A stretch of DNA of 64,000 nucleotides, taken from positions 147,118 through 211,117 of the IMG/VR virus record IMGVR_UViG_3300009104_001827; one strand, 5' to 3'. Position 1 is the first letter of the stretch. Each line of letters starts with the position of its first letter. Position numbers and translations under genes: made by a program. Positions 1,926 to 63,360 of this stretch are shown here, piece by piece. The notes beneath the pieces were generated by a model that saw nothing but the letters and a program-made list of their open reading frames with translations, searched no databases and was not told the origin of the DNA.

Positions 1926-1930
1926 GTGTA
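1926..1930 (+). promoter_or_regulatory. GTGTA motif (candidate late promoter)
   Basis: GTGTA 9 nt before ATG 1940, directly after the terminator. Confidence 0.55.
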
Positions 1931-1939
1931 AACCCAACC

Positions 1940-2593
1940 ATGGGCATATTTGACATTTTCCGCAATTGGCAAAAAAATGAGCTCGGCCAGTTCTCCGAGA
2001 AGAAGGGACAAAAGAAAAAGAGCAAGAAATCCTCAAGCATAGACCCCGAAAAAGCAAAGATCATGCGAAAACTCAAACATAAATCGAAATACCTTGAGCT
2101 AGAATACGAGGAAGCGAAAGAGATTCTAGAGATCGCTAAAACCGAATTCTTTACAAGCATACAAGAGTATTGCCAAGCCAACCCCGAGGCAAAGAACCCT
2201 CTTTGTCCCGTCGAGCCCAACAAGAAAAAAGACAAAACAGACATGGATTTCCCCGACGAACTAAAAACAATCTATCGTGAAATAATTAAAGCGACACACC
2301 CAGACCACCACCAAGAGGGTGACGAAGAGGAGCTAACAGAAACATTGATTAGCGCAACACACGCAAAACAAGAAAACAAAATAGAAGACCTAATCAATAT
2401 ATCCTTCGACCTAGATATTGATATATCAAACATTAGCCTAGACCTTATAGAGGAAGTGGAAAAGGGTTTAAGAAAAAAAGAAATTAAAATAAAGAAAATG
2501 AGAAAAAATAATGCGGTAGTTTGGTATTATGCTCCGCCGGACCAACGGAAAATATTTATCGAACGCATTTGCCCCATTAAAAAAGAAGAATAA
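1940..2593 (+). CDS. J-domain (DnaJ-like) co-chaperone
   Basis: ELKTIYREIIKATHPDH is J-domain helix II plus HPD. ATG 1940 is preferred because TTG 1910 lies inside the terminator. Confidence 0.7.
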   Translation: MGIFDIFRNWQKNELGQFSEKKGQKKKSKKSSSIDPEKAKIMRKLKHKSKYLELEYEEAKEILEIAKTEFFTSIQEYCQANPEAKNPLCPVEPNKKKDKTDMDFPDELKTIYREIIKATHPDHHQEGDEEELTETLISATHAKQENKIEDLINISFDLDIDISNISLDLIEEVEKGLRKKEIKIKKMRKNNAVVWYYAPPDQRKIFIERICPIKKEE

Positions 2594-2599
2594 TTTGCC

Positions 2600-2628
2600 T
2601 TGACATTTATTCCATTTAATGCTAGAAT
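2600..2628 (+). promoter_or_regulatory. Sigma70-type promoter, leaderless nrdB
   Basis: TTGACA-17 nt-TAGAAT with TGn extension; GTG start 7 nt after the -10. Confidence 0.8.
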
Positions 2629-2634
2629 CAACGC

Positions 2635-3648
2635 GTGAATGACAAAACAGGAGAACTTTTAAGCGACAATATCGCTGGAGTGAACAGGATCTTGCCCCAT
2701 AAACACAAGTACGCCTGGGATCTCTTTATAACTAGCTGCGCCAACAACTGGATGCCTACAGAAATATCCATGCAGGGCGACATACAACAATGGAAAAATG
2801 ACGAAATCACAGAAGATGAAAAACTCCTCGTCAAGAGGTGCCTCGGATTTTTTGCTGGAAGCGAGTCTTTGGTTGGGAATAACCTGCTGCTTTCTGCTTT
2901 CAGATTTGTTACGGACGCTGAGTGTCGCCAGTATATTTTGCGCCAGGCTTTCGAGGAAAGCCTTCACAACCTTACTGTCGTTTATATATGCGACAGCCTG
3001 GACCTGGACATTGAAGAGGTTTTTACTGCCTACGAAACAATCCCAAGCATTAAAGCAAAGGACGATTTCCTCCTAGAAATTACAACCGACATCACAAGGC
3101 AGGAACTTAACTACAAAACAAAAGAAGGCAAACAGGAAATACTCAGAAACCTTCTTACTTATTATATAATTTGCGAAGGAACCTTCTTTTTTAGCGGATT
3201 TGCCATGATGCTCGCACTAGGCAGGCAAAATAAACTCCAGGGGATATCCGATCAAATAAAATATACTCTAAGGGACGAAAGTTCCCATATTGCGTTTGGT
3301 GTTTATTTAATAAACACAATCATAGAGCAGAATCCCGGAATCTGGACTAAGGCAATACAAGAGGAATTCGTAGACCACATGAAAAAGGCTGTGGACCTGG
3401 AGATTGCATATGCTCACGACGTATTGCCTACGGGCATTTTGGGTCTCAACGCAGAAATGTTCATTGACTACATGCATTACATAGGCAATCGGCGACTGGA
3501 AGCTATCGGCTTAGACTATCGGTTTCCCGGAGACAAGAACCCATTCCCCTGGCTAGGAGAGGTAGTAGACGTGCAGGCTATGGGCAATTTCTTCGAAAGA
3601 AGGGTCAGAGAATACCAGCAGGCAGGAACGCTTGAAGATGATTTTTAG
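2635..3648 (+). CDS. nrdB: Ribonucleotide reductase small subunit, class Ic (R2c, Mn/Fe) type
   Basis: Ferritin-like ligands (FFAGSE, EESLH, ICEGTFF, RDESSH) and C-terminal NFFERRVREY; colinear with Chlamydia-type NrdB as recalled. Confidence 0.95.
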   Translation: MNDKTGELLSDNIAGVNRILPHKHKYAWDLFITSCANNWMPTEISMQGDIQQWKNDEITEDEKLLVKRCLGFFAGSESLVGNNLLLSAFRFVTDAECRQYILRQAFEESLHNLTVVYICDSLDLDIEEVFTAYETIPSIKAKDDFLLEITTDITRQELNYKTKEGKQEILRNLLTYYIICEGTFFFSGFAMMLALGRQNKLQGISDQIKYTLRDESSHIAFGVYLINTIIEQNPGIWTKAIQEEFVDHMKKAVDLEIAYAHDVLPTGILGLNAEMFIDYMHYIGNRRLEAIGLDYRFPGDKNPFPWLGEVVDVQAMGNFFERRVREYQQAGTLEDDF

Positions 3649-3669: not shown

Positions 3670-3674
3670 GTGTA
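3670..3674 (+). promoter_or_regulatory. GTGTA motif
   Basis: GTGTATATAACATACATC-ATG(3688). Confidence 0.55.
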
Positions 3675-4146: not shown

Positions 4147-6116
4147 TTTTTTCATTTGGATATTTAATTTCAGCGCTAGCAATTTCCGGAATTGCTGCAT
4201 ATTTCAGCGTTGTTGGGCTGGCAACCATTTTTCCCGGGGCAATCGGAGCTGTCATAATCATGGGGGGAGTACTTGAAATAGGAAAAATCATAACGGCCAT
4301 CTGGTTACATAGAAACTGGAAGACAGCACCACTTCTAATTAGAAGCTACCTTTGTTTTGCGGTATTTACGCTCATGGGAATTACTAGTATGGGAATCTTT
4401 GGTTTTCTCTCTAAGGCCCACATAGAGCACCAGGTTACAACCGAAAAGACCCAGGCCCTCGCAGCCCAAGTAGAAAATAAAATATCACGAGAGAAAGACT
4501 ACATAGCCAGGCAAAAAGAATATATTGAAAACCTTGAGTCCAGAACAAGCGAGAGCGCCTCTGACATTCGCATCGACATTGATCAAGAAAACGCCAGAAT
4601 TGCAGACATCACCGAGCAAATGAATAAGGATATAGCATTCGAACAGGGAAGGATTGATGCCGCGAACAAAAAGATTGCAGAGATGAAAGCTGAACTTGCA
4701 GAGCTAGAAGATAAGGCCGGAGGACTATTCAGCAATAAAAAGAAAAAAGTAGAAGAACTCAAGGCCCTCCAAAAGGAGCCACTAGAAAGTCTGGCCTCAG
4801 AGATAGCGACATACAATAAAAACATCACAGATTTTAGATCCGAAGCCCAAGCGGCTATAAAGAAAATCGAAGATAAAAAAGACGCCTTCAGACAAAAAAC
4901 CGAAGTAAAAGGCGAAAGCTTGGCGCCGGAAATAGAAGAGCACAGTAGAAATATAGCGGCAGCATATAATAAAATAGATGACCTTGAAAAGGAAAAGTTC
5001 AATTATCAAGATAACGCAAAAAATCTCGAGGCAGAGGTTGGTCCCGTTAAATACGTCGCAGAACTAATTGCTGACCTTACGGGAGTTGAATTCGATATAT
5101 CCCAGGCAGTCAGAATAGTCATTGTTATCTTAATTTTTGTCTTTGATCCGCTAGCTATCCTCCTGGTTATCGCTGCCAACATCAGTATAGCCAAGCATTT
5201 TCCGCAACATACTAAAGAACTTAAATCCCTTCAGTCTGAAGTCGACAAGCTAGATTCCCTAAAGCTGGAACTCAACGAAAAGAATGACGAAATCACAAAA
5301 GAAAAAGAACGTCTAGCGTCGGAAGAACACGCGCTTTCTAAAGAGGAAAAAAGAATAGAGAAAGACCTCTGCATGGCGGGAGAAGTTCTCTTGGCGCTTA
5401 AAACAGACATTGACAACCAAACGCAAAAAAAAGAAGACATAAACAAGGATATCCTTGCTGCAAAAAACTCCCTCAAGGAACTTAAGTCTAACGCCGATAA
5501 AGCCAAATCAGACCTTTCCCAGCAGGAGCAGGAAATAAAGGCCAAGTCCAAGGCTATGGCAAACAAAACTCAAAAATTAAAAGAAGACAAAGCCGCCGCC
5601 ATTAAGGCTGAGGCAAAAATTAACGCCATTACAGCGAGCACAGAATCCCAGCAGAAAGAATACCAGTCCAAGATAGACGGACTGCAAGAAACAATCGATG
5701 AGCTCATGGCAAGCAAACTCAACATAAAAGAAGAAAAGCTTCAACTAGAAAAAGAGCGCGACGCAATCAAGGCAGACATAAAGATTCAACGAGACCTAAT
5801 TTCCTCACTAGAGAAAACCTATAAAAAGGCATCCAAGACAGGAGGGATTAAAGACGCTTTCTCTAACTACGACCTCTATGAAGTCGTCACAAACATGGAA
5901 GACGGCAACAAATTACTATCGATCAAAGACTCAAGGGAGCGCGTACATCAGTTCATTATCCCCACCATGTATGCAAAGGTAACGCACGAATACTTCCATC
6001 GCGTGGTAGAGTCGCTAGAATCAATTTTGGACCCCGACGATCTACCACACGAATACGCAATAGAGATTGCAAAATACATTAGAGGCCCACGCCCGAAATA
6101 TAAATGCTTGACTTAA
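4143..6116 (+). CDS. Membrane protein with long coiled coils
   Basis: Three N-terminal hydrophobic helices, a coiled coil, an internal TM (IVIVILIFVFDPLAILLVIA), then a second long coiled coil. Confidence 0.8.
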   Translation: MIFSFGYLISALAISGIAAYFSVVGLATIFPGAIGAVIIMGGVLEIGKIITAIWLHRNWKTAPLLIRSYLCFAVFTLMGITSMGIFGFLSKAHIEHQVTTEKTQALAAQVENKISREKDYIARQKEYIENLESRTSESASDIRIDIDQENARIADITEQMNKDIAFEQGRIDAANKKIAEMKAELAELEDKAGGLFSNKKKKVEELKALQKEPLESLASEIATYNKNITDFRSEAQAAIKKIEDKKDAFRQKTEVKGESLAPEIEEHSRNIAAAYNKIDDLEKEKFNYQDNAKNLEAEVGPVKYVAELIADLTGVEFDISQAVRIVIVILIFVFDPLAILLVIAANISIAKHFPQHTKELKSLQSEVDKLDSLKLELNEKNDEITKEKERLASEEHALSKEEKRIEKDLCMAGEVLLALKTDIDNQTQKKEDINKDILAAKNSLKELKSNADKAKSDLSQQEQEIKAKSKAMANKTQKLKEDKAAAIKAEAKINAITASTESQQKEYQSKIDGLQETIDELMASKLNIKEEKLQLEKERDAIKADIKIQRDLISSLEKTYKKASKTGGIKDAFSNYDLYEVVTNMEDGNKLLSIKDSRERVHQFIIPTMYAKVTHEYFHRVVESLESILDPDDLPHEYAIEIAKYIRGPRPKYKCLT

Positions 6117-7562: not shown

Positions 7563-7959
7563 AACCATCCAAGGGTCTCTTAAAAGGCTATCCAAGCCTC
7601 ACAAATACATAATTGACTGGGAAAAAGAAAGCAGAAGCAAACTACAATTCCAAGTCAAACAATTACTGAAGAAACACTGGAAGTCTCATGTGGTTTTCGA
7701 AGAATTTCCAGTCGCAGGAACCAAAATGTCCCTCGACTTTTATAATGCAAACAAGAAAATAGCGATAGAGGTCCAGGGGAAACAACACACAAATTACACC
7801 CCTCACTTCCACGGCGGCAACCAAGCAAACTTCCTATCCCAAAAGAGAAGGGATTATCATAAAAAAATCTTTTGCGAAAAAAACGAAATTAAACTTATTG
7901 AGATACATGAAGGAGAAGATATTGGGGAAAAACTTATCAAAAGTGTATTATATAAATAA
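7552..7959 (+). CDS. DUF559/Vsr-like PD-(D/E)XK endonuclease
   Basis: SLDFYNANKKIAIEVQGKQH...QKRRDYHKKIFCEKNEIKLIEI; likely start ATG 7552. Confidence 0.8.
   Translation: MRFKTIQGSLKRLSKPHKYIIDWEKESRSKLQFQVKQLLKKHWKSHVVFEEFPVAGTKMSLDFYNANKKIAIEVQGKQHTNYTPHFHGGNQANFLSQKRRDYHKKIFCEKNEIKLIEIHEGEDIGEKLIKSVLYK
7943..7947 (+). promoter_or_regulatory. GTGTA motif
   Basis: GTGTATTATATAAATA-ATG(7959). Confidence 0.55.
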
Positions 7960-11903: not shown

Positions 11904-12303
11904 ACAAGCCCCTTATGTTGGCACCGCGCTCCTATTCAAGAACCTTATTCTTTTAGCAAAAAGAATAGAGATATGTCCACATACAAAAGAACGAGTCAAA
12001 TACGGCGGGTATTGGTCGATTTTTTGCGGAGCAGTAGAAGAAAATGAAGCCCACTATATCGCTGCACACAGAGAGGTCTTCGAGGAGACTGGCCTAAATC
12101 TAGATAAAAAAATGTTTGTGCATCAAGAATTAGTTGAAGACCTACGCCTATATACTTATGAACTTGATGAAATGGTCCACCCTACATTGAATTACGAACA
12201 CACAGAGTGGGGGTATTTCAAAATAGATCAAATCAAAATAAGCCCCACCCCAATAGACGAAAAAATTGCGGAGAGGATACAGGGCTTCAGGCGGTCTGTG
12301 TAA
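11857..12303 (+). CDS. Nudix hydrolase
   Basis: Nudix box GAVEENEAHYIAAHREVFEETGL; LNYEHTEWGY. Confidence 0.88.
   Translation: MKDAHTGKEKTGENYEQAPYVGTALLFKNLILLAKRIEICPHTKERVKYGGYWSIFCGAVEENEAHYIAAHREVFEETGLNLDKKMFVHQELVEDLRLYTYELDEMVHPTLNYEHTEWGYFKIDQIKISPTPIDEKIAERIQGFRRSV
12298..12302 (+). promoter_or_regulatory. GTGTA motif
   Basis: GTGTAATTATAAATA-ATG(12313). Confidence 0.55.
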
Positions 12304-18348: not shown

Positions 18349-20900
18349 TATCCAACTTCAAAAAATACAAAGACTGCATGCCCCCAGGTGTACTGCTTCC
18401 GAATATTAAGATCAATAAGAAATATTACGACGAGCTCGAAATCCCGAGCGATTCATCCAATTTCGACTTCCTTAGACACTTATGCCTAAAGGGAGTAAAA
18501 GAAAAAAATATTAACAAGAAAAACGATGACGAAAAGCAGACCTATTATTCTAGAGCAAAAATGGAACTCAAAATCCTTGACGAGCTTGGGTTTATCGACT
18601 ACATTTTACTTAACTGGGATATTCTTGAGTATTGTCATAATAACAATATTCCTACTGGGCCTGGCCGTGGCTCGGCGGCTGGCTCGCTTGTTCTATATCT
18701 GATAGGCGTAACAAAAATAGATCCGGTAGAACATAATCTCTTTTTTGAGAGATTTGTCTCTAAAAGCAGGGCAAAATCCACAGAACATAAGGGAGTAAAA
18801 TACCTTGACGGAGGACTACTGGCGGATATTGACAATGATATAGCCTACGAGCATAGGCAAGAAGTAATAAAATACATCGAGGGAAAACACCCAAATAGCA
18901 CTGCAAAGATATTAACTTTAAATACGCTTAGCAGCAAACTCTGCCTTAGGGAATGCGGGAAAATAGTAGGAGAATTAGACGAGCAGGAAATTTCACTAAT
19001 TACGGACGAGATTCCTAAGCAATTTGGCAAAGTAGACCCTCTTAGCGATTCCTATAATAAAAGCGAAAAAATTAAGGAATGGGCCGACGCCAATCCGCGC
19101 ATATTCGGTGTTGCGAAAAAACTTGAAAACCTGAACAAGAACACGGGAGTTCATCCCTCCGGCATCGCAATTGCCGCAGAAAATATCTCAAACATATGCC
19201 CAATACAAAAGACGAAAGACGGAAGCCTTATTACCGGGTACGATATGAATTGGGTTTCAGAATTAATGGTTAAATTCGACATACTCGGACTTCGAACATT
19301 AAGCGTTATCAATACGACCTGCAAGCGAGTGGGCATATCGGCTGAGGACATAGACATAAATGACGAAGGGGTCTATCTCCCGTTGCAAGACCTTCGCCAC
19401 CCTCATGGGCTTTTCCAAATTGAGGCAGATACAGACTATAAGGTTTGCAAGAAAATTCAGCCCAAAAATATAGAAGAGCTGAGCGCAGTACTGGCAATCG
19501 CTCGCCCAGGTGCATTGGACTTCTTAGATAATTATCACAATCACGTTTCCACGGGCAACTTCCAAAGCATACATCCCTTCTTCGACGACATCCTCTCGCA
19601 CACCGGCGGCATCCCACTGTATCAGGAGCAGTTAATGCAAATGGCCGTAAAGGTTGGATTCACGCTTGACGAATCGGAGCAAATAAGAAGAATAGTGGGT
19701 AAAAAGAAAATCAAAGAAATGCCGATATGGAAAGAAAAAATTAAAGATAAAATATCCGAAAACGGAGTTGATAAAGAAGCCGGAGACGTCCTATGGAGAG
19801 TGGCAGAAGATAGCGCAAACTATTCGTTCAACAAGAGTCACTCAATCGCATACTCCACTCTATCAGCCTGGACAACATATCTAAAATTCAAACACCCCCA
19901 ACAGTTCTTCTTGTCATTGCTTCAGATGACTAGATTTGAGCCCTGCCCTCAAGACGAGATTGGCAAAATCAGTCAAGAGCTATCTTCTTTTGGCATTAAA
20001 CTATTGCCTCCAAATTTGGCAAAGTCAAAAATGGACTTCTCGATAGAGGGTCCAGATATACGCTATGGATTAAATAGCATTAAGGGAATTAGCGAAAAGT
20101 CGCTTAAGTCTTTAATGGAATTCAGAAAAGAGAGCGGAACCTCAAAATATGACATGTTCATGTCTGCCAAGCAGGCCGGACTGAATATAGGTACGGTTTG
20201 CGCCCTCATCCAGGCCGGAGCTCTCTCCAATTACAACGGCAGCAGGCCGCTGCTAGTATTGGAGGCTCAAGTATTCAACTCCCTGACAGAGAGGGAGAAA
20301 AGAAACTTTGTCGAACTAGGCCCAAAGTTTGAGTATAGATTGCTAGATTCTATAGTCCACGCAAGAGACAACGATCTTGTCGGGGACGACGGGAGACCCC
20401 TCTTTAAGGAGTCTAGATTTCAGACCTTCAAGAAAAAGTACGAGCCCTATAAGCAAATTTACATAAAAAATAGCAAGTCTCAGAGTTTCGCAGACTGGTA
20501 TTTTGAGAATCAGCTATTAGGATATTCTTATAGCCAAAACCTAAGGTCTGTATTCTCAAGAAAACCTGAAACATTTGTAAATTATAGCGACTACGAATTA
20601 ATGGGCAAGAATTCCGCAGGAAGAATTATAGGGATGGTGCAGGATTCTTTTGTGAGGACCAGTAGAAGCGGAAATAAGTATATGAAAATTGAAATTGCAG
20701 ACGAGAGAGGAGTATTTCAATGCATGCTATGCAATAGTCGAAGAGGTAACAGGCTGGACGAATTCTTGGAAGACAACGACGTTCCAGATAAAAACAGTAT
20801 AGTAATTGCCTATGGCTCCAAAGGGGAAGACGCCTTCTTTCTGGAAGACATGAAAATTATGGATGAGCAAATTTACATGAAGCTCGCAGACCTCAAATAG
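18345..20900 (+). CDS. dnaE: DNA polymerase III alpha catalytic part (no PHP domain)
   Basis: GPGRGSAAGSLV, LFFERF, DIDND, KFDILGL, YQEQLM, YSFNKSHS, C-terminal OB fold; SD GGAGGT before ATG 18345. Confidence 0.95.
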   Translation: MISNFKKYKDCMPPGVLLPNIKINKKYYDELEIPSDSSNFDFLRHLCLKGVKEKNINKKNDDEKQTYYSRAKMELKILDELGFIDYILLNWDILEYCHNNNIPTGPGRGSAAGSLVLYLIGVTKIDPVEHNLFFERFVSKSRAKSTEHKGVKYLDGGLLADIDNDIAYEHRQEVIKYIEGKHPNSTAKILTLNTLSSKLCLRECGKIVGELDEQEISLITDEIPKQFGKVDPLSDSYNKSEKIKEWADANPRIFGVAKKLENLNKNTGVHPSGIAIAAENISNICPIQKTKDGSLITGYDMNWVSELMVKFDILGLRTLSVINTTCKRVGISAEDIDINDEGVYLPLQDLRHPHGLFQIEADTDYKVCKKIQPKNIEELSAVLAIARPGALDFLDNYHNHVSTGNFQSIHPFFDDILSHTGGIPLYQEQLMQMAVKVGFTLDESEQIRRIVGKKKIKEMPIWKEKIKDKISENGVDKEAGDVLWRVAEDSANYSFNKSHSIAYSTLSAWTTYLKFKHPQQFFLSLLQMTRFEPCPQDEIGKISQELSSFGIKLLPPNLAKSKMDFSIEGPDIRYGLNSIKGISEKSLKSLMEFRKESGTSKYDMFMSAKQAGLNIGTVCALIQAGALSNYNGSRPLLVLEAQVFNSLTEREKRNFVELGPKFEYRLLDSIVHARDNDLVGDDGRPLFKESRFQTFKKKYEPYKQIYIKNSKSQSFADWYFENQLLGYSYSQNLRSVFSRKPETFVNYSDYELMGKNSAGRIIGMVQDSFVRTSRSGNKYMKIEIADERGVFQCMLCNSRRGNRLDEFLEDNDVPDKNSIVIAYGSKGEDAFFLEDMKIMDEQIYMKLADLK

Positions 20901-20904
20901 TGTA
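20900..20904 (+). promoter_or_regulatory. GTGTA motif
   Basis: GTGTAAGTTATC-ATG(20912). Confidence 0.55.
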
Positions 20905-23949: not shown

Positions 23950-23954
23950 TACAC
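23950..23954 (-). promoter_or_regulatory. GTGTA motif
   Basis: Minus strand GTGTAATTAAATAGG-ATG(23939). Confidence 0.55.
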
Positions 23955-24915: not shown

Positions 24916-24920
24916 TACAC
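24916..24920 (-). promoter_or_regulatory. GTGTA motif
   Basis: Minus strand, just after the capsid terminator and 25 nt before ATG 24890. Confidence 0.5.
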
Positions 24921-28455: not shown

Positions 28456-28460
28456 TACAC
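28456..28460 (-). promoter_or_regulatory. GTGTA motif upstream of the head operon
   Basis: Minus strand GTGTAAGATTATTCTAAAGAGTT-ATG(28437). Confidence 0.55.
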
Positions 28461-31929: not shown

Positions 31930-32984
31930 AGGGAATCAGACTTTGATATTCCAAGAACTCTAGCTTTCCAATCTGGCATTTTTTCCAGCTCATCCATTTC
32001 GTTGCTAATGAGCTTTTGTTGCATTTGAGCCATCTTTAACATGATACCCCTTTCCTCTTCCTCCTGAAACAGCTGCACTAGGTTAAGTATGCTTGCGTTC
32101 TTTGAAACCTGGCTTGCTATTCTTTTGGATCTGTCGCCCTGAAGCTTGGAGATTAAGGATTCCATTCTTTTTTCGCATTGATTGTATTCTTCGCTTTTTG
32201 TTTTTAGGATTTCAGTCAACCTAATGGTCATGTCTTGCTGCTCCTCCGCTTCATCAAACATTCTATTGAGTTTGTCCATTGCGCTTTGAATTCTTTTTAA
32301 ATGGATATAATCCATACAAACATTAATATACAGATTTATTTCGTCCGTGGTAAGATCCGGCTTATCCCAGGTAGCCCTAACAAATTCTGCCTCAAACAAA
32401 TTGCGGTCCTCAAGGCCCGTGTAAGTTTCAATTACCTGAAGAAACCGTGGTGCAGACATAAACTTCCTTAAAGCCTCTATGCATCGTTTGTATTGCACCG
32501 TCATTTTATCCTCGGAAATTTCGACGCCGACGCAATCCTGAATTTTCTTCATTATTTTGCTATCTGCCTTCGGAGGGGAATATTTAATGTTCATTGCGGT
32601 TTCATTTTTAGGAACATCTAAACCTTCCTCGTGAATAAAATCATGAACCGCCCAGAACTCTTTGCTCATGTGTTTTATTTCTGCCCCGGCAAATACGAGC
32701 CTTGCTAACGCCACGCTACTCACATCTGCGGCGGAGTTGTTTCGAATAAATTCCTTTTGCTCCTCTGTGAGCTGGATATCATCTTTTTTGCTAATGTGCC
32801 GAGTAGAATAGTCAATCCCCGCTTCCTTCATGAATTTTCTAACAAGTCGCCCCTCCCTTGTTCTGCCGTCAAGGGAGTCGTCCATAAAAACGTCTCTAGT
32901 TAATTTGGACAAATCTCCAATTATTGGAGCATTCTCTTTAATAAATGCCTTTTGATCTTCCGTAAGCTCCGGCAGCGGTTTCAT
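31926..32984 (-). CDS. Hypothetical protein (repeated N-terminal helical motif, C-terminal coiled coil)
   Basis: LTEDQKAFIKEN and LTEEQKEFIRNN repeat; ORF coupled to neighbours. Confidence 0.75.
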   Translation of the reverse strand: MKPLPELTEDQKAFIKENAPIIGDLSKLTRDVFMDDSLDGRTREGRLVRKFMKEAGIDYSTRHISKKDDIQLTEEQKEFIRNNSAADVSSVALARLVFAGAEIKHMSKEFWAVHDFIHEEGLDVPKNETAMNIKYSPPKADSKIMKKIQDCVGVEISEDKMTVQYKRCIEALRKFMSAPRFLQVIETYTGLEDRNLFEAEFVRATWDKPDLTTDEINLYINVCMDYIHLKRIQSAMDKLNRMFDEAEEQQDMTIRLTEILKTKSEEYNQCEKRMESLISKLQGDRSKRIASQVSKNASILNLVQLFQEEEERGIMLKMAQMQQKLISNEMDELEKMPDWKARVLGISKSDSL

Positions 32985-33765
32985 ATATAATAATTTCTCC
33001 TTTATCTAAAATAGACGCAGCCTTGTCTTTGAAAATTTTCTTTAAATTTTTCAATTGCTTATAGCCTGCTTTTCGACCCCTTTCGCTCGTCTTATACCCC
33101 ATCACCTTAGCGACTTCCTCTTCATCCATATGTTGGACGTAAAGCATATCGTAAACCTTGTATTGCTTCTCGGGCAACGCCTCTTTCATTGCCTTCGCTA
33201 ATTTACCCGCAGCCTCCTCAATGTCGACTTGAGTATCCTGTATGGAGCCAACCTCATGAGTGTGATGTTCTATGGTGACAGCCATCTTAATGTCATAGGC
33301 TGCCTTCTTAGTTTTGCTCCACTTTAAATACAATGGGCACTCGCTATCCTGTAGCCCGCTTGAGGTGAAGCCGCACAAACTGCCCGGGGTTATTCCTGGA
33401 TCCTTCCCGGATCTGGACTGATTAAAAGGGCAATTAAGGCAAGGTCGGACAAAATTAGAATAGTTATTACGCAAAATATTTTTCATTTGATTAGTAATAA
33501 TCTTATTGATCCACGGCCCTAGTGGGCGGCTCTGATCCCATTGGTCCCATTTTTTAAAAATATGAGCGCGTATAATTTGCTCTACATCCTCAAAATCAAA
33601 CCAGGACAGGGAGTCCAAAAACCACTTGCCCCGTCGCTTTCTTATCTCCAGATTAATGTCTTCGAATTTATCCTCAAAAGAGAACTGGGGAGCTTCACCA
33701 TCAAGATCCTTGTCTTTTGGAGGTTTTTCTTCTTTTTCTTTGTCTTTTTTTCTTGGGCGCTTCAT
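32938..33765 (-). CDS. Phage-encoded sigma70-family (group 4-like) sigma factor with Cys4 insert
   Basis: Region 2-like DFEDVEQIIRAHIFKKWDQWDQSRPLGPWINKIITNQMKNILR; CLNC...C...C; region 4-like ALPEKQYKVYDMLYVQHMDEEEVAKVMG. Start uncertain (ATG 33765 or TTG 33780). Confidence 0.75.
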   Translation of the reverse strand: MKRPRKKDKEKEEKPPKDKDLDGEAPQFSFEDKFEDINLEIRKRRGKWFLDSLSWFDFEDVEQIIRAHIFKKWDQWDQSRPLGPWINKIITNQMKNILRNNYSNFVRPCLNCPFNQSRSGKDPGITPGSLCGFTSSGLQDSECPLYLKWSKTKKAAYDIKMAVTIEHHTHEVGSIQDTQVDIEEAAGKLAKAMKEALPEKQYKVYDMLYVQHMDEEEVAKVMGYKTSERGRKAGYKQLKNLKKIFKDKAASILDKGEIIIYETAAGAYGRSKGIY

Positions 33766-34727: not shown

Positions 34728-35042
34728 TTATTTACACTTACAAACTCCATTAATGCGCTGCTTTCTGTATACAAACGCAGATCCGAAAGTACATATAATA
34801 ACCGCTAATACAATCCATCCTAACCCAGATGTAGGCTGATCGGTATTAATTGATACAGAATTTGAATAGTACTCCTCCCTGTTTATTGTCCCATTTTTAT
34901 CTGTATCAACAGCTTCGAATGACTCTACTACATTTGGCACCGGAGCGGACGGTGCGGCGTTTCGACTTTTAAATATCTTCGGGCCACTACAGCCAGTGCT
35001 CATAAATATTAACAATATTAATAATATAATTTTATTCATCAT
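34728..35042 (-). CDS. Lipoprotein with EF-hand loop and C-terminal TM helix
   Basis: Signal peptide with lipobox STGC; DTDKNGTINREE; GLGWIVLAVIICTFGSAFVY-RK. Confidence 0.7.
   Translation of the reverse strand: MMNKIILLILLIFMSTGCSGPKIFKSRNAAPSAPVPNVVESFEAVDTDKNGTINREEYYSNSVSINTDQPTSGLGWIVLAVIICTFGSAFVYRKQRINGVCKCK
34733..34737 (-). promoter_or_regulatory. GTGTA motif
   Basis: Minus strand GTGTAAATAAATATT-ATG(34722). Confidence 0.55.
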
Positions 35043-37301: not shown

Positions 37302-37327
37302 TACACACTACAGAACGATAAAGTGTA
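37302..37327. promoter_or_regulatory. Back-to-back GTGTA motifs at a divergent junction
   Basis: TACAC 37302-37306 (16 nt before phoH ATG) and GTGTA 37323-37327 (10 nt before ATG 37338). Confidence 0.6.
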
Positions 37328-58573: not shown

Positions 58574-58611
58574 TACACTAAATAGTTATAGGTCCCAACA
58601 ATATAAGTGTA
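58574..58611. promoter_or_regulatory. Back-to-back GTGTA motifs at a divergent junction
   Basis: TACAC 58574-58578 (19 nt before ATG 58554) and GTGTA 58607-58611 (44 nt before ATG 58656). Confidence 0.55.
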
Positions 58612-58655: not shown

Positions 58656-59255
58656 ATGAGAATTTCGCACAAAAACAAATGGATCTTCCTGTCGTCATCC
58701 AGAACCGGCTCCACTTCTACTCGTAAAGCATTAGATAAATTTAGTGACATAAAGTCGGTGCATTATTCTAAATGCGAAGAAGAGCAAAATCCATTCTATA
58801 ACCATATAAGCTTAAGGGAGGTTCAATCTATATTCAAGCATGATAATATAGACTTCAAATCATACACAACATTTACTGCGGTACGCAATCCATGGGACAG
58901 GGCGTTATCTTTGTATTTTCACTCTCAACAAATTATGCATAATCCTGCCCCCACCGCATTTAGCGATTGGATAAAAAAAGTACAAGCCAGAGGCCCTTTA
59001 TATGGTCAAATTTACAACCAGTGCTTAGATGATAAAAATCAATATGCGATAGATTCTATAATCAGGTTTGAGCATATGCAAAAAGACTTCAATGTTGTTT
59101 GCGACAAAATAGGGATCTCAAGACAACAACTTCCACACGTAAATGCAACCAAACACAAACACTACACCGAATACTATAACTATGAAACCCATGAAATCGT
59201 TGCCGAAAAATACGCAAAAGATATTGAACATTTCGGATATGAATTTGGAGATTAA
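58656..59255 (+). CDS. Sulfotransferase family 2 protein
   Basis: ISHKNKWIFLSSSRTGSTS (5'-PSB), VRNPWDRALSLY (3'-PB), IIRFE. Confidence 0.85.
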   Translation: MRISHKNKWIFLSSSRTGSTSTRKALDKFSDIKSVHYSKCEEEQNPFYNHISLREVQSIFKHDNIDFKSYTTFTAVRNPWDRALSLYFHSQQIMHNPAPTAFSDWIKKVQARGPLYGQIYNQCLDDKNQYAIDSIIRFEHMQKDFNVVCDKIGISRQQLPHVNATKHKHYTEYYNYETHEIVAEKYAKDIEHFGYEFGD

Positions 59256-59257
59256 AA

Positions 59258-59842
59258 ATGATAAGTCACAAACATAAATTTATTTTTGTTCATATCAATA
59301 AAACTGGAGGTACGAGTATTGAAGTGTTATTAAAGAAGTATTCAAACAAATTTGAAAAACATCAATCAATTATTGACTTAAATAAAGAAGCATCTTCTAA
59401 CGATTATTTTAAATTCACTTTCGTAAGAAACAGTTGGGATAGATTCTTATCCTTGTACAAATACCGAATAAAAACAAACCAAACAAAGCTTGGTAGTAAT
59501 CCCATACCCTTTAAAGAATGGGCAAAACATATCTATGATAAGAACCCGAAATATTACAATACTCCTAACAAATTTAAACTTCTTATGTTATCAGATCAAC
59601 TTGACTGGATCACAGATGCAAATGGTAGTGTGAACATGGATTTCATCGGAAGATTTGAAAACCTCCAAGAAGACTTTAATATCGTGTGTGACAATATTGA
59701 AATTCCACATTCACAACTTCCACATATAAACAAAACTGAACACAAACATTATACCGAATATTACGATGAAGAAACAAAGCAAATCGTTGCCGAAACATAC
59801 GCAAAAGACATTGAGTATTTCGGATATAAATTTGGAGATTAA
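59258..59842 (+). CDS. Sulfotransferase family 2 protein
   Basis: FVHINKTGGTSI, VRNSWDRFLSLY, FIGRFENL. Confidence 0.88.
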   Translation: MISHKHKFIFVHINKTGGTSIEVLLKKYSNKFEKHQSIIDLNKEASSNDYFKFTFVRNSWDRFLSLYKYRIKTNQTKLGSNPIPFKEWAKHIYDKNPKYYNTPNKFKLLMLSDQLDWITDANGSVNMDFIGRFENLQEDFNIVCDNIEIPHSQLPHINKTEHKHYTEYYDEETKQIVAETYAKDIEYFGYKFGD

Positions 59843-60478
59843 ATGATTACTTTTATTCACATAGGAAAATGCGGCGGCACTACAATCAAAAGAACACTGA
59901 TAGATAATGCTGTTAAATTTAGGCATATTCACCTTAAACGTCCTGAGCATGAGCCTGACTCAAAATATCTTATTGCATTGAGAAATCCAGTAGAGCGTTT
60001 TATTTCAGCGTTCTATTGGCGCAGATTTTTATTACTCAGCGGTCAAGAAGCTGGAGGAAAAGAGCTAGAATTTTATAAAGAGTATAAAGATTTGAACAAC
60101 GTATGCGAGCATCTTTTTGACGAGAACAGCAACTTAAATCCATTGATTGACTCGAAAATTCACCAACATTATACATGCGGACACCCCTCTCATGTAGGCA
60201 TGGGCATCGATTATTATATTGGAGGCATAACAAGAGAACTGACTCCGAAAAATGTTTTTGGCGCGATATGCACTGAAACACTCTCTCAAGATATGAAAAG
60301 ACTGTTTGACGTTGAAGTTACCAGGCATGCTAGAAAAAATTCTGCGAACAAGTTAGAAACAACACAGCAATCAAGATTTCTCTTAAAGAAATATTTAGCA
60401 AAAGACTATCAATGTATTGATAAATTATATTTATCGAATATCTTATCCGAAGAGCAATACGAAATATTAAAAACATGA
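59843..60478 (+). CDS. Sulfotransferase family protein
   Basis: FIHIGKCGGTTI, LRNPVERFISAF. Confidence 0.82.
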   Translation: MITFIHIGKCGGTTIKRTLIDNAVKFRHIHLKRPEHEPDSKYLIALRNPVERFISAFYWRRFLLLSGQEAGGKELEFYKEYKDLNNVCEHLFDENSNLNPLIDSKIHQHYTCGHPSHVGMGIDYYIGGITRELTPKNVFGAICTETLSQDMKRLFDVEVTRHARKNSANKLETTQQSRFLLKKYLAKDYQCIDKLYLSNILSEEQYEILKT

Positions 60479-60484
60479 AAAAAA

Positions 60485-61816
60485 ATGATTAGCCATAAAC
60501 ATAAATATATATTTGTCCATATCCCTAAATGCGGAGGAAGCAGCACGGAACTATCCCTGCTTGAGGCGGAGGGCGTGGATTGTAGCGATGCCAACGAAAT
60601 AAACCAATTACCCGAAGATATACTGAGTACATATTTCATGAACAATGATCTTGCCATGGAACCCCAACACTATACGCTTGAAGAATATCCGGAGTATTTT
60701 CAAAAAGAATATTTTTGTTTTACAATAATAAGGAATCCGTGGGAGATTTGGGTTAGCGAGTACCATCACGAATTGAGGGTCAGGAAAAGACTGGGCAGAC
60801 CTAAAGTCACTTTTGAGGAGTTTATACGGAAGAATAAAGGCTTCAAGTATCACCTTCGAAGCCAAATGGATTTCATTAATCAAAACATGGACTATGTAGG
60901 TAGAATGGAGAGTATAGATTCTGACTTTATGGAAATATGCGACAAATTAGGTATTGACGCTCAGCTGAAACACAGAAACAAAGGAAAATACGAAAATCAT
61001 TACAGCGAATACTACAACGAAGGGATTCTATCTCTTATAAATTCACACAATTCCCTCCTAGGATCAACTGGAAAACTTGATGCGCAACTTATGGGGTACG
61101 AGAGTAATCCCGGCAATCCAAAGAGTGAAAACGAAGAAAATCCCCACGAAGCAACAATGGACAATGTCTTCTTTATTAATCTCGACAGTAGAAAAGACCG
61201 AAAAGAGCTCGTAGAGAATGAACTCAACGAGCTAAATTGGTCTTATGAGAGATTCCCCGGAACCAAAACTTCTGACGGAAGAATAGGGGCGACGATAAGC
61301 CACATAGGAGCGCTAGAGTTGGCTGCGGCGAGAGATCTGGATTACGCCGTAATTTTAGAGGATGATATCCACTTTAGGGATAAAGCTTTATTTTTGCGCC
61401 AGCTCAAAAAATGCCTAAAGGAGATCAATGACTTTGATGTATTACTTCTTGGGGGGCAGATTGGGCCAAAAGACGAGAGAATTACCGAATACGCGTTTAA
61501 ATTAAAACACTGCGTAACCGCAACGGGCTATATAGTTAACAAGCATTACTACAAGCGATTCCTTGAGCACTCGAAGAAAGGGCTTAATTTATTAATTGAA
61601 AACCCATCAGGGATCCGAAGTCAAAATCAATATGCATTTGATATTTATTGGTGGGAATTGCAGGAAAGGGATAAATGGTACATGGTCGCTCCCGCCTGCG
61701 TAGAACAAAGGGATGGATTTAGCGACATCAGAGAACAATATACTGACCACAGAAAATTATTCACAACCGCCTGGAAGGAGAAATCTCACCTAATTAATAC
61801 AAAGGGATATTGCTAA
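60485..61816 (+). CDS. Sulfotransferase-GT25 glycosyltransferase fusion
   Basis: N-half HIPKCGGSS and IRNPW; C-half FFINLDSRKDRK, GATISH, VILEDD, TGYIVN, QRDGFSDI. Confidence 0.85.
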   Translation: MISHKHKYIFVHIPKCGGSSTELSLLEAEGVDCSDANEINQLPEDILSTYFMNNDLAMEPQHYTLEEYPEYFQKEYFCFTIIRNPWEIWVSEYHHELRVRKRLGRPKVTFEEFIRKNKGFKYHLRSQMDFINQNMDYVGRMESIDSDFMEICDKLGIDAQLKHRNKGKYENHYSEYYNEGILSLINSHNSLLGSTGKLDAQLMGYESNPGNPKSENEENPHEATMDNVFFINLDSRKDRKELVENELNELNWSYERFPGTKTSDGRIGATISHIGALELAAARDLDYAVILEDDIHFRDKALFLRQLKKCLKEINDFDVLLLGGQIGPKDERITEYAFKLKHCVTATGYIVNKHYYKRFLEHSKKGLNLLIENPSGIRSQNQYAFDIYWWELQERDKWYMVAPACVEQRDGFSDIREQYTDHRKLFTTAWKEKSHLINTKGYC

Positions 61817-61818
61817 TT

Positions 61819-62532
61819 ATGAGTAAAATCTGCATACCCAAAGTAGCCTGGTTATACTGGGACAAGGGCTGGAGCAATGCCCCAACCATAGTTCGAGCGT
61901 GCAGAAATAGGCTAACCAGAATCAACCCCGACTGGACCTTTCATTTTTTGTCCGACGAAAATTTAGATGAATTTATTAATTTAGATGGACTTGGGAATAT
62001 TCCTGTGCAGGCGAAGTCTGACGCGATAAGAATCCTTCTTCTTGAGAAGTTTGGGGGAATATGGCTAGATGCAACATTGTACGTTAATCTACCCCTTGAT
62101 GAGTGGCTGTGGGATAATTTAGGGCAGGAGTTTTTTGCTTTTAGCAATCCTCGTAAAAACTTCGGCAGGATTGTCTCGAGCTGGTTTCTTGCGGGAAGAA
62201 ATGACAACTATATTATAAATAAATGGAAGATCGAAACCTTAAAATATTGGGAAAATAGAGAAGAGGCCGATCAATATTTTTGGTTTCATAATCTATTTAA
62301 AGAAATGTACGATAAAGATGAAAAATTCAGCCTCCTTTGGGATAGGACTAACAAGATTGATTGCGATGTTGGCACAAGACAAGGGCCTCATTTTTTTGCC
62401 CCATATACAGACGAAATACTTAAATCAATAGCGTCGCAGGAAGTCCCCGCTTCTCCAGTATTTAAATTGACCTGGAGAGTAGACCTATTGAAATCTCCTG
62501 TCATTCAAGAATTATTCAAAGATGATATGTAG
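61819..62532 (+). CDS. GT32/capsular polysaccharide synthesis-type glycosyltransferase
   Basis: IPKVAWLYWDKG, SDAIRILLLEKFGGIWLDA, YFWFH, VFKLTW. Start may be 61810 or 61819. Confidence 0.85.
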   Translation: MSKICIPKVAWLYWDKGWSNAPTIVRACRNRLTRINPDWTFHFLSDENLDEFINLDGLGNIPVQAKSDAIRILLLEKFGGIWLDATLYVNLPLDEWLWDNLGQEFFAFSNPRKNFGRIVSSWFLAGRNDNYIINKWKIETLKYWENREEADQYFWFHNLFKEMYDKDEKFSLLWDRTNKIDCDVGTRQGPHFFAPYTDEILKSIASQEVPASPVFKLTWRVDLLKSPVIQELFKDDM

Positions 62533-62616
62533 AATAAACGCAATGCGGGTAGGTTAAAAATATTATATATAATATGCACATCTATTCAAAGAAAGCAACC
62601 TACCAATCTTCGATTA

Positions 62617-62621
62617 GTGTA
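62617..62621 (+). promoter_or_regulatory. GTGTA motif
   Basis: GTGTAATATAAATTTATAGAA-ATG(62638). Confidence 0.55.
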
Positions 62622-62637
62622 ATATAAATTTATAGAA

Positions 62638-63360
62638 ATGAAGGTCCTACAATATTCATATCCCCGCAGCGGCTCTACCGTAGTCTGGAATATTCTAGAG
62701 GATCTCCTCTCCCCCGAGAACACAGAAAATAAAGATAGATTCTTTTATCCAGCGAACGTGATTAAGACACATGACCTAAGGTACTTTAGACAATTCTATG
62801 CATTCAAAGGAAAAATTAAATTCTACAATATTGATTATAAATGTGGCCTCCTGGTATCTACGATTCGACACCCAATAACAAATTGTCTTTCACTGTTAAG
62901 GGTAGGAATGGTAGGGGCGTCCCCAGATAAACCTTCTGTATCAAAAGCACAAGGAAAAGAAGAAGTTACAAATGAAACAATTACATTAAAATTACAAAAC
63001 TATATTAACCATTACGAATGGATGTTAAAACAATTAAAAGAAAAATCAAGCAAAAGAAATACAATCCTCTTTGATTATGACCAACAAATAAAACCAATTA
63101 AGCCTATACTGAATACATTAGAGGGGAAGCTAGGAATACTCATTTTAAATAAAGAAGATAAAATTAAATACTTCCTACCGCCGACCTTAATGGATCATGG
63201 ACTCGATAAATTTGACCAACAAGACAATTCCACCTTAATGCACGGAGAGCATGTAAAATCAAATAAATACCCAATTGAGCACGAAATTTTAGCTTTAGAA
63301 AATCCTTTAATTGAAAAAGCGACAGAACTCTATCTTGAGCTTCGCGAACAATATACTTAA
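62638..63360 (+). CDS. Sulfotransferase-like P-loop protein
   Basis: SYPRSGSTVVWNIL, VIKTHD, TIRHPITNCLS. Confidence 0.72.
   Translation: MKVLQYSYPRSGSTVVWNILEDLLSPENTENKDRFFYPANVIKTHDLRYFRQFYAFKGKIKFYNIDYKCGLLVSTIRHPITNCLSLLRVGMVGASPDKPSVSKAQGKEEVTNETITLKLQNYINHYEWMLKQLKEKSSKRNTILFDYDQQIKPIKPILNTLEGKLGILILNKEDKIKYFLPPTLMDHGLDKFDQQDNSTLMHGEHVKSNKYPIEHEILALENPLIEKATELYLELREQYT

What the first reader, a model, noticed from the sequence alone, without database searches (positions are those of the whole stretch)
1926..62638. GTGTA motif upstream of structural/accessory genes: candidate phage late promoter read by the encoded sigma factor
Seen: GTGTA followed by a mostly AT-rich spacer lies 7-25 nt upstream of 13 start codons. 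On + these are 1926, 3670, 7943, 12298, 20900, 37323 and 62617; on - they are 23950, 24916, 28456, 34733, 37302 and 58574. A 14th copy at 58607 is 44 nt from its ATG. Two copies directly follow terminators (1926, 24916) and two pairs sit back-to-back at divergent junctions (37.3 kb, 58.6 kb). None shows an obvious TTGACA. The genes served include the head operon, giant-fibre operon, ClpC, DUF1501, PhoH and a sulfotransferase. A rough expectation for a 5-mer in a ~19-nt window over ~50 genes is about one hit. Inference: this is a -10-only late promoter, analogous to T4 TATAAATA/gp55, recognised by the sigma at 32938-33765. I do not know this motif-sigma pair from characterised phages.
Basis: partly seen in the sequence, partly recalled or inferred. 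Interest (0 to 1): 0.85.

Follow-up and report, generated by a model that had tools for sequence, protein, structure and literature searches.

The report
GTGTA promoter of marine jumbo phages
A strictly conserved five-letter signal, GTGTA, sits about ten bases before the start of some forty genes in this uncultured 211-kb marine phage and in hundreds of its relatives.

Summary
All 14 GTGTA copies are where stated. GTGTA is depleted overall in the window (30 found, 58.6 expected), yet it is the most enriched 5-mer before gene starts in the whole 211-kb phage genome (38 of 250 genes, 1.9 expected). Across relatives it lies exactly 9-10 nt before an ATG 203 times against 1.4 expected. One-mismatch variants are not enriched.

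The geometry fits a -35-less, -10-type promoter with the start about 10 nt after GTGTA:
- There are no sites at 8 nt and 129 at 9 nt.
- The 9-nt spacer is G-poor.
- Shine-Dalgarno-like blocks occur only when the spacing is 19-30 nt, and they begin 9-12 nt after GTGTA.
- A second promoter class of the host type (TTGACA-17-TAnnnT) also puts the start on the ATG.
- One marine metatranscriptome contig ends at the ATG below the 28456 copy, with no RNA upstream.

The sigma assignment is not supported. The sigma at 32938-33765 lies behind GTGTA promoters itself. It has no homologue in two complete relatives that keep the motif. A second sigma outside the window is driven by a host-type promoter and is present in all five genomes analysed in full, so it is the better candidate. 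The closest known case is phiEco32 gp36 with AATGTA. This is a new member of a known kind.

The parts
1926..1930 (+). GTGTA promoter core. ATG at 1940 (9-nt gap, leaderless geometry). Serves a 217-aa gene, then the RNR small chain at 2635-3648. Abuts the terminator at 1901-1919.
3670..3674 (+). GTGTA promoter core. 13-nt gap to the ATG at 3688 (152-aa gene, then a 657-aa gene).
7943..7947 (+). GTGTA promoter core. 11-nt gap to the ATG at 7959 (88-aa gene).
12298..12302 (+). GTGTA promoter core. 10-nt gap to the ATG at 12313 (DUF1501 protein). It overlaps the stop codon of the upstream gene.
20900..20904 (+). GTGTA promoter core. 7 nt to the ATG at 20912 and 10 nt to the adjacent in-frame ATG. 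Serves the ClpB/ClpC-type ATPase.
23950..23954 (-). GTGTA promoter core. 10-nt gap to the ATG at 23939 (181-aa gene).
24916..24920 (-). GTGTA promoter core following the terminator at 24974-24946. 25-nt gap containing an AAGG...TAAGGA Shine-Dalgarno-like leader before the ATG at 24890.
   Evidence: An RNA contig ends at 24914. That is ambiguous, because the contigs in this stretch are fragmentary.
28456..28460 (-). GTGTA promoter core of the three-gene operon 28437->25000 (528, 210 and 393 aa; probable portal/decoration/capsid genes). 18-nt gap to the ATG.
   Evidence: Metatranscriptome X1 gives one contig of depth 95 covering 25012-28435 (plus 2 unaligned nt), with zero depth over 28601-29000.
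34733..34737 (-). GTGTA promoter core. 10-nt gap to the ATG at 34722. The operon runs on through the sigma gene 32938-33765 to the terminase at 28483-30354.
37302..37306 (-). GTGTA promoter core. 16-nt gap to the ATG at 37285 (PhoH). Divergent partner of the copy at 37323.
37323..37327 (+). GTGTA promoter core. 10-nt gap to the ATG at 37338 (68-aa ORF). Divergent partner of the copy at 37302.
58574..58578 (-). GTGTA promoter core. 19-nt gap with an AGGAAAAAGG leader before the ATG at 58554 (171-aa gene, then the 6589-aa ORF 38270-58039).
58607..58611 (+). GTGTA copy 44 nt before the ATG at 58656 (first of four sulfotransferase-family genes). Divergent partner of the copy at 58574. The leader is long and A-rich.
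62617..62621 (+). GTGTA promoter core. 16-nt gap to the ATG at 62638 (240-aa gene, no family hit).
32938..33765 (-). Sigma-70-family gene ('sigma 1'). It has sigma2 and sigma4 domains and an invariant four-cysteine insertion in the linker. It is a member of the GTGTA regulon. It is not shown to read the motif.

Best explanation
GTGTA is the invariant core of a phage-specific promoter class with no -35 element. It occupies roughly -14 to -10. It is flanked by A/T-rich DNA and followed by a G-poor stretch of about 9 nt that would melt. Transcription starts at about the 10th or 11th nt after the motif. In more than half of the pooled copies that have an ORF-opening ATG within 50 nt, that nucleotide is the A of the ATG or lies 1-3 nt before it (leaderless mRNA). 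In the rest it opens a short purine-rich leader of the AGGAATAAGG type. The class drives the middle/late part of the programme: tail fibres, the terminase operon, the probable capsid operon and a set of auxiliary genes. Early genes and the main replication operons (DnaB, RecA-like, SSB, DNA polymerase III alpha) use a host-type TTGACA-17-TAnnnT class.

The best candidate is the 208-aa two-domain sigma at genome 133960-134586 ('sigma 2', outside the window), which is made early from a host-type promoter. The sigma at window 32938-33765 is expressed from GTGTA promoters and is not needed for the motif to persist.

Shown: enrichment, strictness, geometry, conservation across the clade, one RNA boundary, and the positions of both sigma genes relative to the two promoter classes. 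Inferred: the exact transcription start, sigma dependence, and which sigma reads the motif.
For: Enrichment and strictness:
- 38 of 250 genes carry the motif against 1.9 expected.
- Pooled over three genomes and 76 loci, GTGTA lies 9 or 10 nt before the ATG 203 times against 1.4 expected. Every one-mismatch variant is near 1x except GTATA at 4.5x.
- GTGTA is about two-fold depleted in the window overall.

Geometry:
- Gap counts are 0 at 8 nt, 129 at 9 nt and 70 at 10 nt.
- Shine-Dalgarno-like 4-mers occur in 3% of 9-10-nt gaps (5% of 11-13-nt gaps) and in 62% of 19-30-nt gaps.
- In the long gaps the purine block starts 9-12 nt after GTGTA in 37 of 48 cases, and G is nearly absent before that point.
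- Host-type promoters place TTGACW 29-30 nt before the ATG in 30-36 genes per genome, so leaderless starts are the norm in this system.
- No -35 element is present. The only enriched upstream word is TACAC, which comes from divergent partner promoters.
- Among 30 divergent junctions, 7 are two-sided against 0.85 expected.

RNA: the X1 contig of depth 95 ends at the ATG below the 28456 copy, with no coverage over 28601-29000 in the terminase gene.

Sigma logic:
- Sigma 2 lies behind a class-1 promoter in G000, G001 and G002 and in 53 of 80 loci.
- Sigma 1 lies behind GTGTA in nearly all relatives examined.
- G004 and G005 lack the sigma 1 family but keep sigma 2 and the motif.
- Both proteins are sigma-70-family by profile and by fold.

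Precedent: phiEco32 gp36 reads AATGTA centred at -11.5 (PMC12276001).
Against: - No 5' end has been mapped at nucleotide resolution. The one usable RNA boundary comes from assembled contigs and stops 8-10 nt short of the predicted start.
- A second contig ends at 24914, which is 9 nt upstream of the predicted start of the 24916 copy. The contigs there are fragmentary, and read-through from the upstream operon is possible.
- Both phage sigmas keep a highly conserved sigma4 recognition helix, yet no -35 motif exists.
- G004 and G005 carry a different second ECF-like sigma, so the test for whether sigma 1 is dispensable is not clean.
- No genome was found that has the motif but lacks sigma 2, or the reverse. 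The link to sigma 2 therefore rests on co-occurrence and expression order.
- The host is unknown, so a host sigma cannot be excluded.
Confidence: 0.55

Rival explanations
1. One reading: GTGTA is a -10-only late promoter read by the sigma encoded at 32938-33765 (sigma 1), possibly with positive autoregulation.
For: Sigma 1 is a genuine sigma-70-family protein. It is the more conserved of the two (59-100% identity among the 120 best of 868 relatives), which fits an invariant motif. ECF-type sigmas commonly drive their own operon, and this one sits behind GTGTA.
Against: It is expressed only from GTGTA promoters, and no host-type promoter lies before it. Something else must therefore fire the class first. 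Two complete relatives with the motif have no homologue at E <= 10.
Confidence: 0.15
2. A host sigma holoenzyme reads GTGTA as an unusual extended -10-like element. The holoenzyme could be primary or alternative, and phage RNAP-binding proteins might redirect it, as gp39/gp76 of Thermus phage P23-45 do. The phage sigmas would then do something else.
For: P23-45 late promoters are of the extended -10 class and are read by host sigma A (PMC4124052). The motif contains TG next to TA. The host is unknown. No third motif was found for a second phage sigma to read.
Against: The register differs from TGnTAnnnT, and the -7 position is not conserved. The 5-mer tolerates no mismatch, unlike host promoters. 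It stays invariant in phages of 33-43% GC that probably have different hosts. About 385 kb of Planctomycetota/Verrucomicrobiota-type DNA shows no GTGTA 9-10 nt before starts.
Confidence: 0.2
3. GTGTA lies at or in the 5' end of the RNA. It would be an initiator for an unrecognised phage RNA polymerase, or an RNA-processing or leader element, rather than a -10-type element.
For: One RNA contig ends 2 nt after the 24916 copy. Some copies have a TATAAT 2-4 nt upstream. Several giant ORFs of unknown function could hide a polymerase.
Against: No RNAP beta-type domain was detected. The region upstream of GTGTA carries no positional -10 signal. The sharp lower bound of 9 nt, the G-poor 9-nt spacer, and the leader blocks anchored to GTGTA rather than to the ATG all fit a start 10 nt downstream. 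Divergent partners only 11-50 nt apart leave no room for other promoters.
Confidence: 0.07
4. GTGTA is a non-canonical ribosome-binding signal.
For: It lies at a tight distance from the ATG, similar to Shine-Dalgarno spacing.
Against: - Ordinary AAGGA/AGGAG elements are separately enriched before internal genes.
- These elements occur between GTGTA and the ATG when the gap is long.
- Only about 15% of genes carry GTGTA, preferentially at operon heads and divergent junctions.
- GTGTA has no complement in the conserved 16S 3' tail (my own knowledge).
Confidence: 0.03

Closest known systems
phiEco32 middle/late promoters read by the phage sigma gp36 (consensus AATGTA centred at -11.5; PMC12276001)
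   Same: A single short conserved element around -10 that contains TGTA. No conserved -35 consensus. Early genes use host -10/-35 promoters.
   Different: The consensus is GTGTA, not AATGTA, and sits about 1 nt further upstream by inference. Neither sigma here matches gp36 by sequence or fold search. No gp79-like co-factor was identified. Here the class is coupled to leaderless mRNAs. The genome is a 211-kb marine phage with two sigmas.
T4 late promoters (TATAAATA) read by gp55 with gp33 and the sliding clamp
   Same: A -10-only architecture, a strict motif, and a phage-encoded specificity factor.
   Different: The sequence is different. gp55 is a sigma2-only fragment that needs gp33 and gp45, whereas both proteins here have sigma2 and sigma4 domains. 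T4 late mRNAs are leadered.
Thermus phage P23-45 late promoters (extended -10 class, host sigma A plus gp39/gp76; PMC4124052)
   Same: A switch from -10/-35 promoters to promoters without a -35 element.
   Different: P23-45 encodes no phage sigma, and its motif is the host's own extended -10. Here the register and the -7 position do not fit TGnTAnnnT, and two phage sigmas are encoded.
Leaderless expression from a -10 region adjacent to the ORF (Deinococcus-Thermus, Actinobacteria; PMC12340547, PMC3160421)
   Same: The promoter element lies at a fixed short distance from the start codon, so that +1 coincides with the A of the ATG. This is seen here for both promoter classes.
   Different: Those are host TAnnnT promoters. 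Here one class uses a phage-specific GTGTA core.

Membership tests
Phage-specific -10-only promoter read by a phage-encoded sigma (T4 gp55 / phiEco32 gp36 type) | A short conserved element centred near -10 relative to the transcription start | tested here: inconclusive
   The geometry places +1 about 10 nt after GTGTA. One RNA contig boundary agrees to within about 10 nt. No nucleotide-resolution 5' ends are available.
Phage-specific -10-only promoter read by a phage-encoded sigma (T4 gp55 / phiEco32 gp36 type) | No conserved -35 element | tested here: met
   Information content is <= 0.3 bit at every position from -50 to -1 over 337 non-redundant sites. No spaced k-mer is enriched apart from the divergent partner TACAC.
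Phage-specific -10-only promoter read by a phage-encoded sigma (T4 gp55 / phiEco32 gp36 type) | The phage encodes a sigma-family protein | tested here: met
   Two Sigma70_r2 matches lie above the cut-off (26.8 and 26.7 bits). Folds and profiles hit only sigma factors.
Phage-specific -10-only promoter read by a phage-encoded sigma (T4 gp55 / phiEco32 gp36 type) | Transcription from the motif depends on that sigma | not testable with these tools
   This needs in vitro transcription or genetics. The only indirect evidence is expression order and co-occurrence.
Host sigma-70 -10/-35 promoter | TTGACA-like hexamer 16-18 bp upstream of TAnnnT | tested here: not met
   Absent at GTGTA sites. It is present as a separate class at 30-36 other genes per genome.
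Extended -10 promoter (TGnTAnnnT) | TG one base upstream of a TAnnnT hexamer, with conserved -11A and -7T | tested here: not met
   TG abuts TA with no spacer base. The fourth base after GTGTA (the would-be -7) is A 43% and T 43%.
T4 late promoter | TATAAATA at -10 | tested here: not met
   The invariant word is GTGTA. The downstream A/T stretch is not positionally conserved.
Shine-Dalgarno ribosome-binding site | Purine-rich element complementary to the 16S 3' end, 5-10 nt before most starts, including internal operon genes | tested here: not met
   AAGGA/AGGAG are separately enriched and lie between GTGTA and the ATG in long-gap sites. GTGTA occurs at only about 15% of genes and rarely at tightly coupled ones.
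Sigma-70 family (protein at 32938-33765) | A sigma2 domain (region 2) and a sigma4 domain (region 4) | tested here: met
   Pfam r2 scores 24.1 bits (cut-off 24) and r4_2 scores 17.9 bits. The six-frame hit scores 26.8 bits. The AlphaFold model is confident over residues 30-110 and 180-255. All top Foldseek hits are sigma factors, including M. tuberculosis SigH at probability 0.96.

The most novel reading that the evidence does not exclude
A cosmopolitan, wholly uncultured clade of 140-210-kb marine phages runs a three-tier programme on leaderless mRNAs. The host sigma reads TTGACA-type promoters placed so that +1 is the ATG. An early phage sigma (sigma 2) then reads a five-base, mismatch-intolerant, -35-less GTGTA element. 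That regulon in turn produces a second, highly conserved sigma with a four-cysteine (probably zinc-binding) insertion, whose target is still unknown.
Probability: 0.35. Interest if true: 0.65.

Novelty: new member of a known kind. Interest (0 to 1): 0.55.

Why it matters
The motif gives a simple, nearly error-free rule (GTGTA, then 9-10 nt, then ATG) for finding operon heads and true start codons in hundreds of uncultured marine jumbo-phage genomes, where most genes have no annotation.

It pairs a minimal, mismatch-intolerant promoter with small phage sigma factors. That pairing can be tested directly in vitro without culturing the phage.

The five-base element with an orthogonal sigma could also serve as a compact expression switch.

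It also shows that both the host-type and the phage-type promoters of this clade are built for leaderless translation, which says something about the unknown host.

Tried and rejected
- **Third promoter motif for the second sigma.** K-mer and positional enrichment on 1341 upstream regions lacking both known classes found nothing comparable.
- **A -35 element with variable spacing upstream of GTGTA.** None was found. The only enriched word is the divergent partner TACAC.
- **Cultured relatives.** The sigma has no hit in 50,697 phage records, and the terminase finds only hits of about 27% identity in Bacillus phages.
- **Literature.** No paper links GTGTA to a phage promoter.
- **Host inference.**
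  - The best cellular hits for DUF1501 are Opitutia at 43% and Planctomycetota at about 37%.
  - Homologues sit in MAGs labelled Halobacteriovorax, Actinobacteria, Dehalococcoidia and Paracoccaceae, which contradict each other and are probably mis-binned phage contigs.
  - No WhiB is present.
  - The tmRNA tag begins like cyanobacterial tags (the comparison rests on my memory).
  - The host remains unresolved.
- **GTGTA in 385 kb of Planctomycetota/Verrucomicrobiota-type DNA.** There is no positional signal.
- **Extra 5'-end evidence from contigs of about 3.35-3.4 kb encoding the first gene of the 28456 operon.** These contigs run 120-1200 nt upstream of the gene and are not truncated at a start.
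- **Homology of either sigma to phiEco32 gp36.** It was not detected by sequence, profile or fold search.
- **Multisubunit RNA polymerase in the genome.** No RNA_pol_Rpb2_6 match was found.
- **The RNA contig end at 24914.** I did not use it as evidence for a start, because the contigs in that low-depth stretch are broken every few hundred bases.

Full report
**What the window is.** The window is the last 64 kb (147118-211117) of a single 211,117-bp IMG/VR virus record that CheckV rates complete. Its GC content is 43%. No cultured relative exists in 50,697 phage records: the sigma finds nothing and the terminase finds only hits of about 27% identity. Relatives are abundant in marine metagenomes and metatranscriptomes. 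The sigma in the window has 157 IMG/VR loci and 868 protein relatives.

**The observation.** All 14 GTGTA copies are at the stated positions and strands, with the stated gaps to the next ORF-opening ATG. The two terminator-promoter junctions are real (1901-1919 before 1926, and 24974-24946 before 24916). So are the two back-to-back pairs.

GTGTA is under-represented in the window (30 against 58.6 in dinucleotide shuffles), yet nearly half of the copies sit just before starts. In the whole genome it is by far the most enriched 5-mer upstream of genes, at 38 of 250 against 1.9 expected (z = 26). In 78 related loci it precedes 384 of 1719 genes against 18 expected (z = 85).

I pooled the three complete genomes (211, 205 and 184 kb) with 76 loci. 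In that set the word lies exactly 9 or 10 nt before the first ATG of an ORF 203 times against 1.4 expected. Every single-base variant stays near background except GTATA at 4.5x.

Some gene labels were wrong. The + strand block 582-23440 holds RNR, RecA-like, DnaB, primase, nuclease, DUF1501, DNA polymerase III alpha and ClpB/C genes, not a head operon. PhoH and the sulfotransferases are right.

**Anatomy.**
- Aligning sites on GTGTA shows no information upstream beyond A/T richness, and no -35 element, whether fixed or variably spaced.
- The one enriched upstream word is TACAC, the partner promoter on the other strand. It is present at 28% of sites. Of 30 divergent junctions in three genomes, 7 are two-sided against 0.85 expected, and 10 are one-sided.
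- The gap to the ATG has a razor-sharp lower bound. The counts are 0 at 8 nt, 129 at 9, 70 at 10, 20 at 11 and 34 at 12, followed by a thin tail.
- Short-gap sites have essentially no Shine-Dalgarno-like element: 3% at 9-10 nt and 5% at 11-13 nt. In 19-30-nt gaps, 62% have one.
- In those long gaps the purine block (typically AGGAATAAGG) begins 9-12 nt after GTGTA in 37 of 48 cases, while its distance to the ATG floats. G is almost absent in the first nine positions after the motif and rises sharply at positions 10-14.

Together these features place +1 at about the 10th or 11th nucleotide after GTGTA. The motif then sits at about -14 to -10, followed by an easily melted spacer. The RNA begins either with AUG or with a short leader that carries its own ribosome-binding site.

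**A second promoter class calibrates the geometry.** Thirty to thirty-six genes per genome carry TTGACW 29-30 nt before the ATG, with a TAnnnT 17 bp downstream. This is canonical sigma-70 geometry that puts +1 on the A of the ATG. It shows that leaderless initiation is the rule in this system.

This class dominates the left arm of small genes. It also heads the DnaB, RecA-like, DNA polymerase III and SSB operons. GTGTA heads the tail-fibre genes, the terminase operon, the probable capsid operon, the giant ORFs and several auxiliary genes. GTGTA is therefore a middle/late class. It is not purely structural, and about ten copies lie among the small genes.

**RNA evidence.** One marine metatranscriptome (X1) holds 53% of the sampled words of window 20000-29000. 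When it is laid on 23001-29000, a single contig of depth 95 covers 25012-28435, with two further unaligned letters. That span is the three-gene minus-strand operon up to its start codon at 28437. Depth is zero over 28601-29000 in the terminase gene and 12-30 over the next operon.

This is a transcript 5' boundary within about 20 nt downstream of the 28456 copy, and 8-10 nt short of the predicted start. A 218-nt contig ends at 24914, two bases after the 24916 copy, which would be upstream of the predicted start. The contigs in that low-depth stretch break every few hundred bases, so I give that end little weight. Only one such call was allowed, and the data are assembled contigs rather than reads.

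**Who reads it.** The genome has two sigma-70-family genes.

It has confident sigma2 and sigma4 domains, and all of its top Foldseek hits are sigma factors. An invariant four-cysteine insertion sits in the linker.

Sigma 2 (genome 133960-134586, 208 aa) has sigma2, a linker and sigma4. It carries a clear region 2.3/2.4 block, and its profile hits FliA and SigA.

Three observations separate the two:
- Sigma 1 lies in an operon fed by the GTGTA copies at 37302 and 34733, and the same arrangement is seen in nearly all relatives examined. No host-type promoter lies before it.
- Sigma 2 sits between a dNMP kinase and SSB in an operon headed by a TTGACA promoter 830-900 nt upstream. This holds in all three genomes and in 53 of 80 related loci.
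- Two complete relatives (150,766 and 139,273 bp) encode sigma 2 homologues but nothing matching the sigma 1 family, even at E <= 10. They still place GTGTA 9-11 nt before the ATG of their large genes: 12 sites at 9-10 nt in one and 8 sites at 9-11 nt in the other.

The last test is not clean. Those two genomes carry a different ECF-like sigma of about 180 aa, behind host-type promoters. Even so, the only sigma family common to all five genomes analysed in full is sigma 2, and it is the one made before the class fires. No third motif for sigma 1 was found.

**Rivals.** A host holoenzyme could read GTGTA as an odd extended -10 element, perhaps after phage remodelling as in Thermus phage P23-45 (PMC4124052). 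Four points argue against this:
- The register and the -7 position do not fit TGnTAnnnT.
- No mismatch is tolerated.
- The word is invariant in phages of 33-43% GC.
- There is no positional signal in 385 kb of Planctomycetota/Verrucomicrobiota-type DNA.

The host is unknown, so this rival keeps about 0.2.

An initiator or RNA-level role conflicts with the geometry, and no phage RNA polymerase was detected.

A ribosome-binding role conflicts with the separate AAGGA/AGGAG signal and with the long-gap sites.

**Comparison with known systems.** The architecture is that of phage middle/late promoters read by a phage sigma. The nearest case is phiEco32. Its middle and late promoters have AATGTA centred at -11.5, read by the 214-aa two-domain sigma gp36 (PMC12276001). 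The shared TGTA lies within about one base of the same register.

Homology of either sigma here to gp36 was not detectable. T4 TATAAATA/gp55 shares only the -10-only logic.

Three things are new here:
- the word itself;
- its strictness and its spread across a cosmopolitan uncultured clade;
- its systematic coupling to leaderless mRNAs, together with two phage sigmas arranged as a likely cascade.

I class it as a new member of a known kind.

**Verdict.**
- Observation: confirmed.
- Promoter interpretation: well supported (about 0.85 for 'promoter element'). This is my estimate for the promoter reading alone. It is not meant to add up with the figures filed for the best and rival explanations, which were set separately.
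- 'Late': partly supported.
- Named sigma: not supported.
- Best overall statement (a phage-sigma-read promoter, most likely read by sigma 2): 0.55.

Noticed in passing
window 6108-6136, 8231-8259, 15558-15586, 16428-16456 (and 30-36 sites per genome): A second promoter class of the host type (TTGACW, 17 bp, TAnnnT) lies 29-30 nt before the ATG, so that +1 coincides with the start codon. Leaderless early and replication transcripts therefore appear to be the norm in this phage clade.
   Followed up: partly
genome 133960-134586 (L193:13960-14586), outside the window: A second sigma-70-family gene (208 aa, sigma2 plus sigma4). It lies in an early operon with a dNMP kinase and SSB behind a TTGACA promoter. 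It has 361 IMG/VR relatives and is the better candidate reader of GTGTA.
   Followed up: yes
window 32938-33765 (-), residues 109-143 of the protein: The sigma in the window carries four invariant cysteines (C109, C112, C131, C143) in an insertion between the sigma2 and sigma4 domains. This is probably a zinc-binding module. The AlphaFold model has low confidence in this region.
   Followed up: partly
genome 55016-55391 (L189:15016-15391, -) and L188:16773-17239, L189:10188-10264: The phage encodes a one-piece tmRNA (Rfam RF00023, 128 bits; tag ANNIVRFEDFTACGEELALAA) and four tRNAs (Leu, Ser, Thr, Arg). From memory, the start of the tag resembles cyanobacterial tags. This was not tested.
   Followed up: partly
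window 38270-58039 (-): A single 6589-aa ORF is co-transcribed with a 171-aa gene from the GTGTA copy at 58574. Other giant ORFs (3032, 3810 and 1649 aa) lie elsewhere in the genome. Their functions were not examined.
   Followed up: no
window 58656-62532 (+): A run of four sulfotransferase-family genes, one of them fused to a GT25 glycosyltransferase, plus a capsular-polysaccharide-synthesis-type gene. This cluster modifies glycans or surfaces and sits in a phage.
   Followed up: partly
window 12313-13587 (+); L107: The phage DUF1501 gene is 79% identical to one on a 23.7-kb contig of a MAG labelled Halobacteriovorax. Homologues of other phage proteins sit in MAGs labelled Actinobacteria, Dehalococcoidia and Paracoccaceae. 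These are probably phage contigs binned into bacterial MAGs. True cellular relatives are Opitutia (43%) and Planctomycetota (about 37%).
   Followed up: partly
window 63373-63377 (-), 11785-11789 (+), 13874-13878 (+): Three further GTGTA copies have A/T-rich flanks like the functional ones but no ORF-opening ATG at 9-30 nt. They could be internal or antisense promoters, or chance copies.
   Followed up: no
G004:122350-122895 and G005:116713-117252 (relatives): Relatives that lack the four-cysteine sigma carry a different ECF-like sigma of about 180 aa (Sigma70_r2, 44 and 39 bits) behind host-type promoters. The second sigma slot of the clade has therefore been exchanged.
   Followed up: partly
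window 33780-33690 (-) and the matching region of related loci: The N-terminal part of the sigma in the window and its relatives is lysine/arginine-rich, with a KKRGRPRK-like stretch in several relatives. It overlaps the end of the upstream ORF, so the true start codon is uncertain.
   Followed up: no
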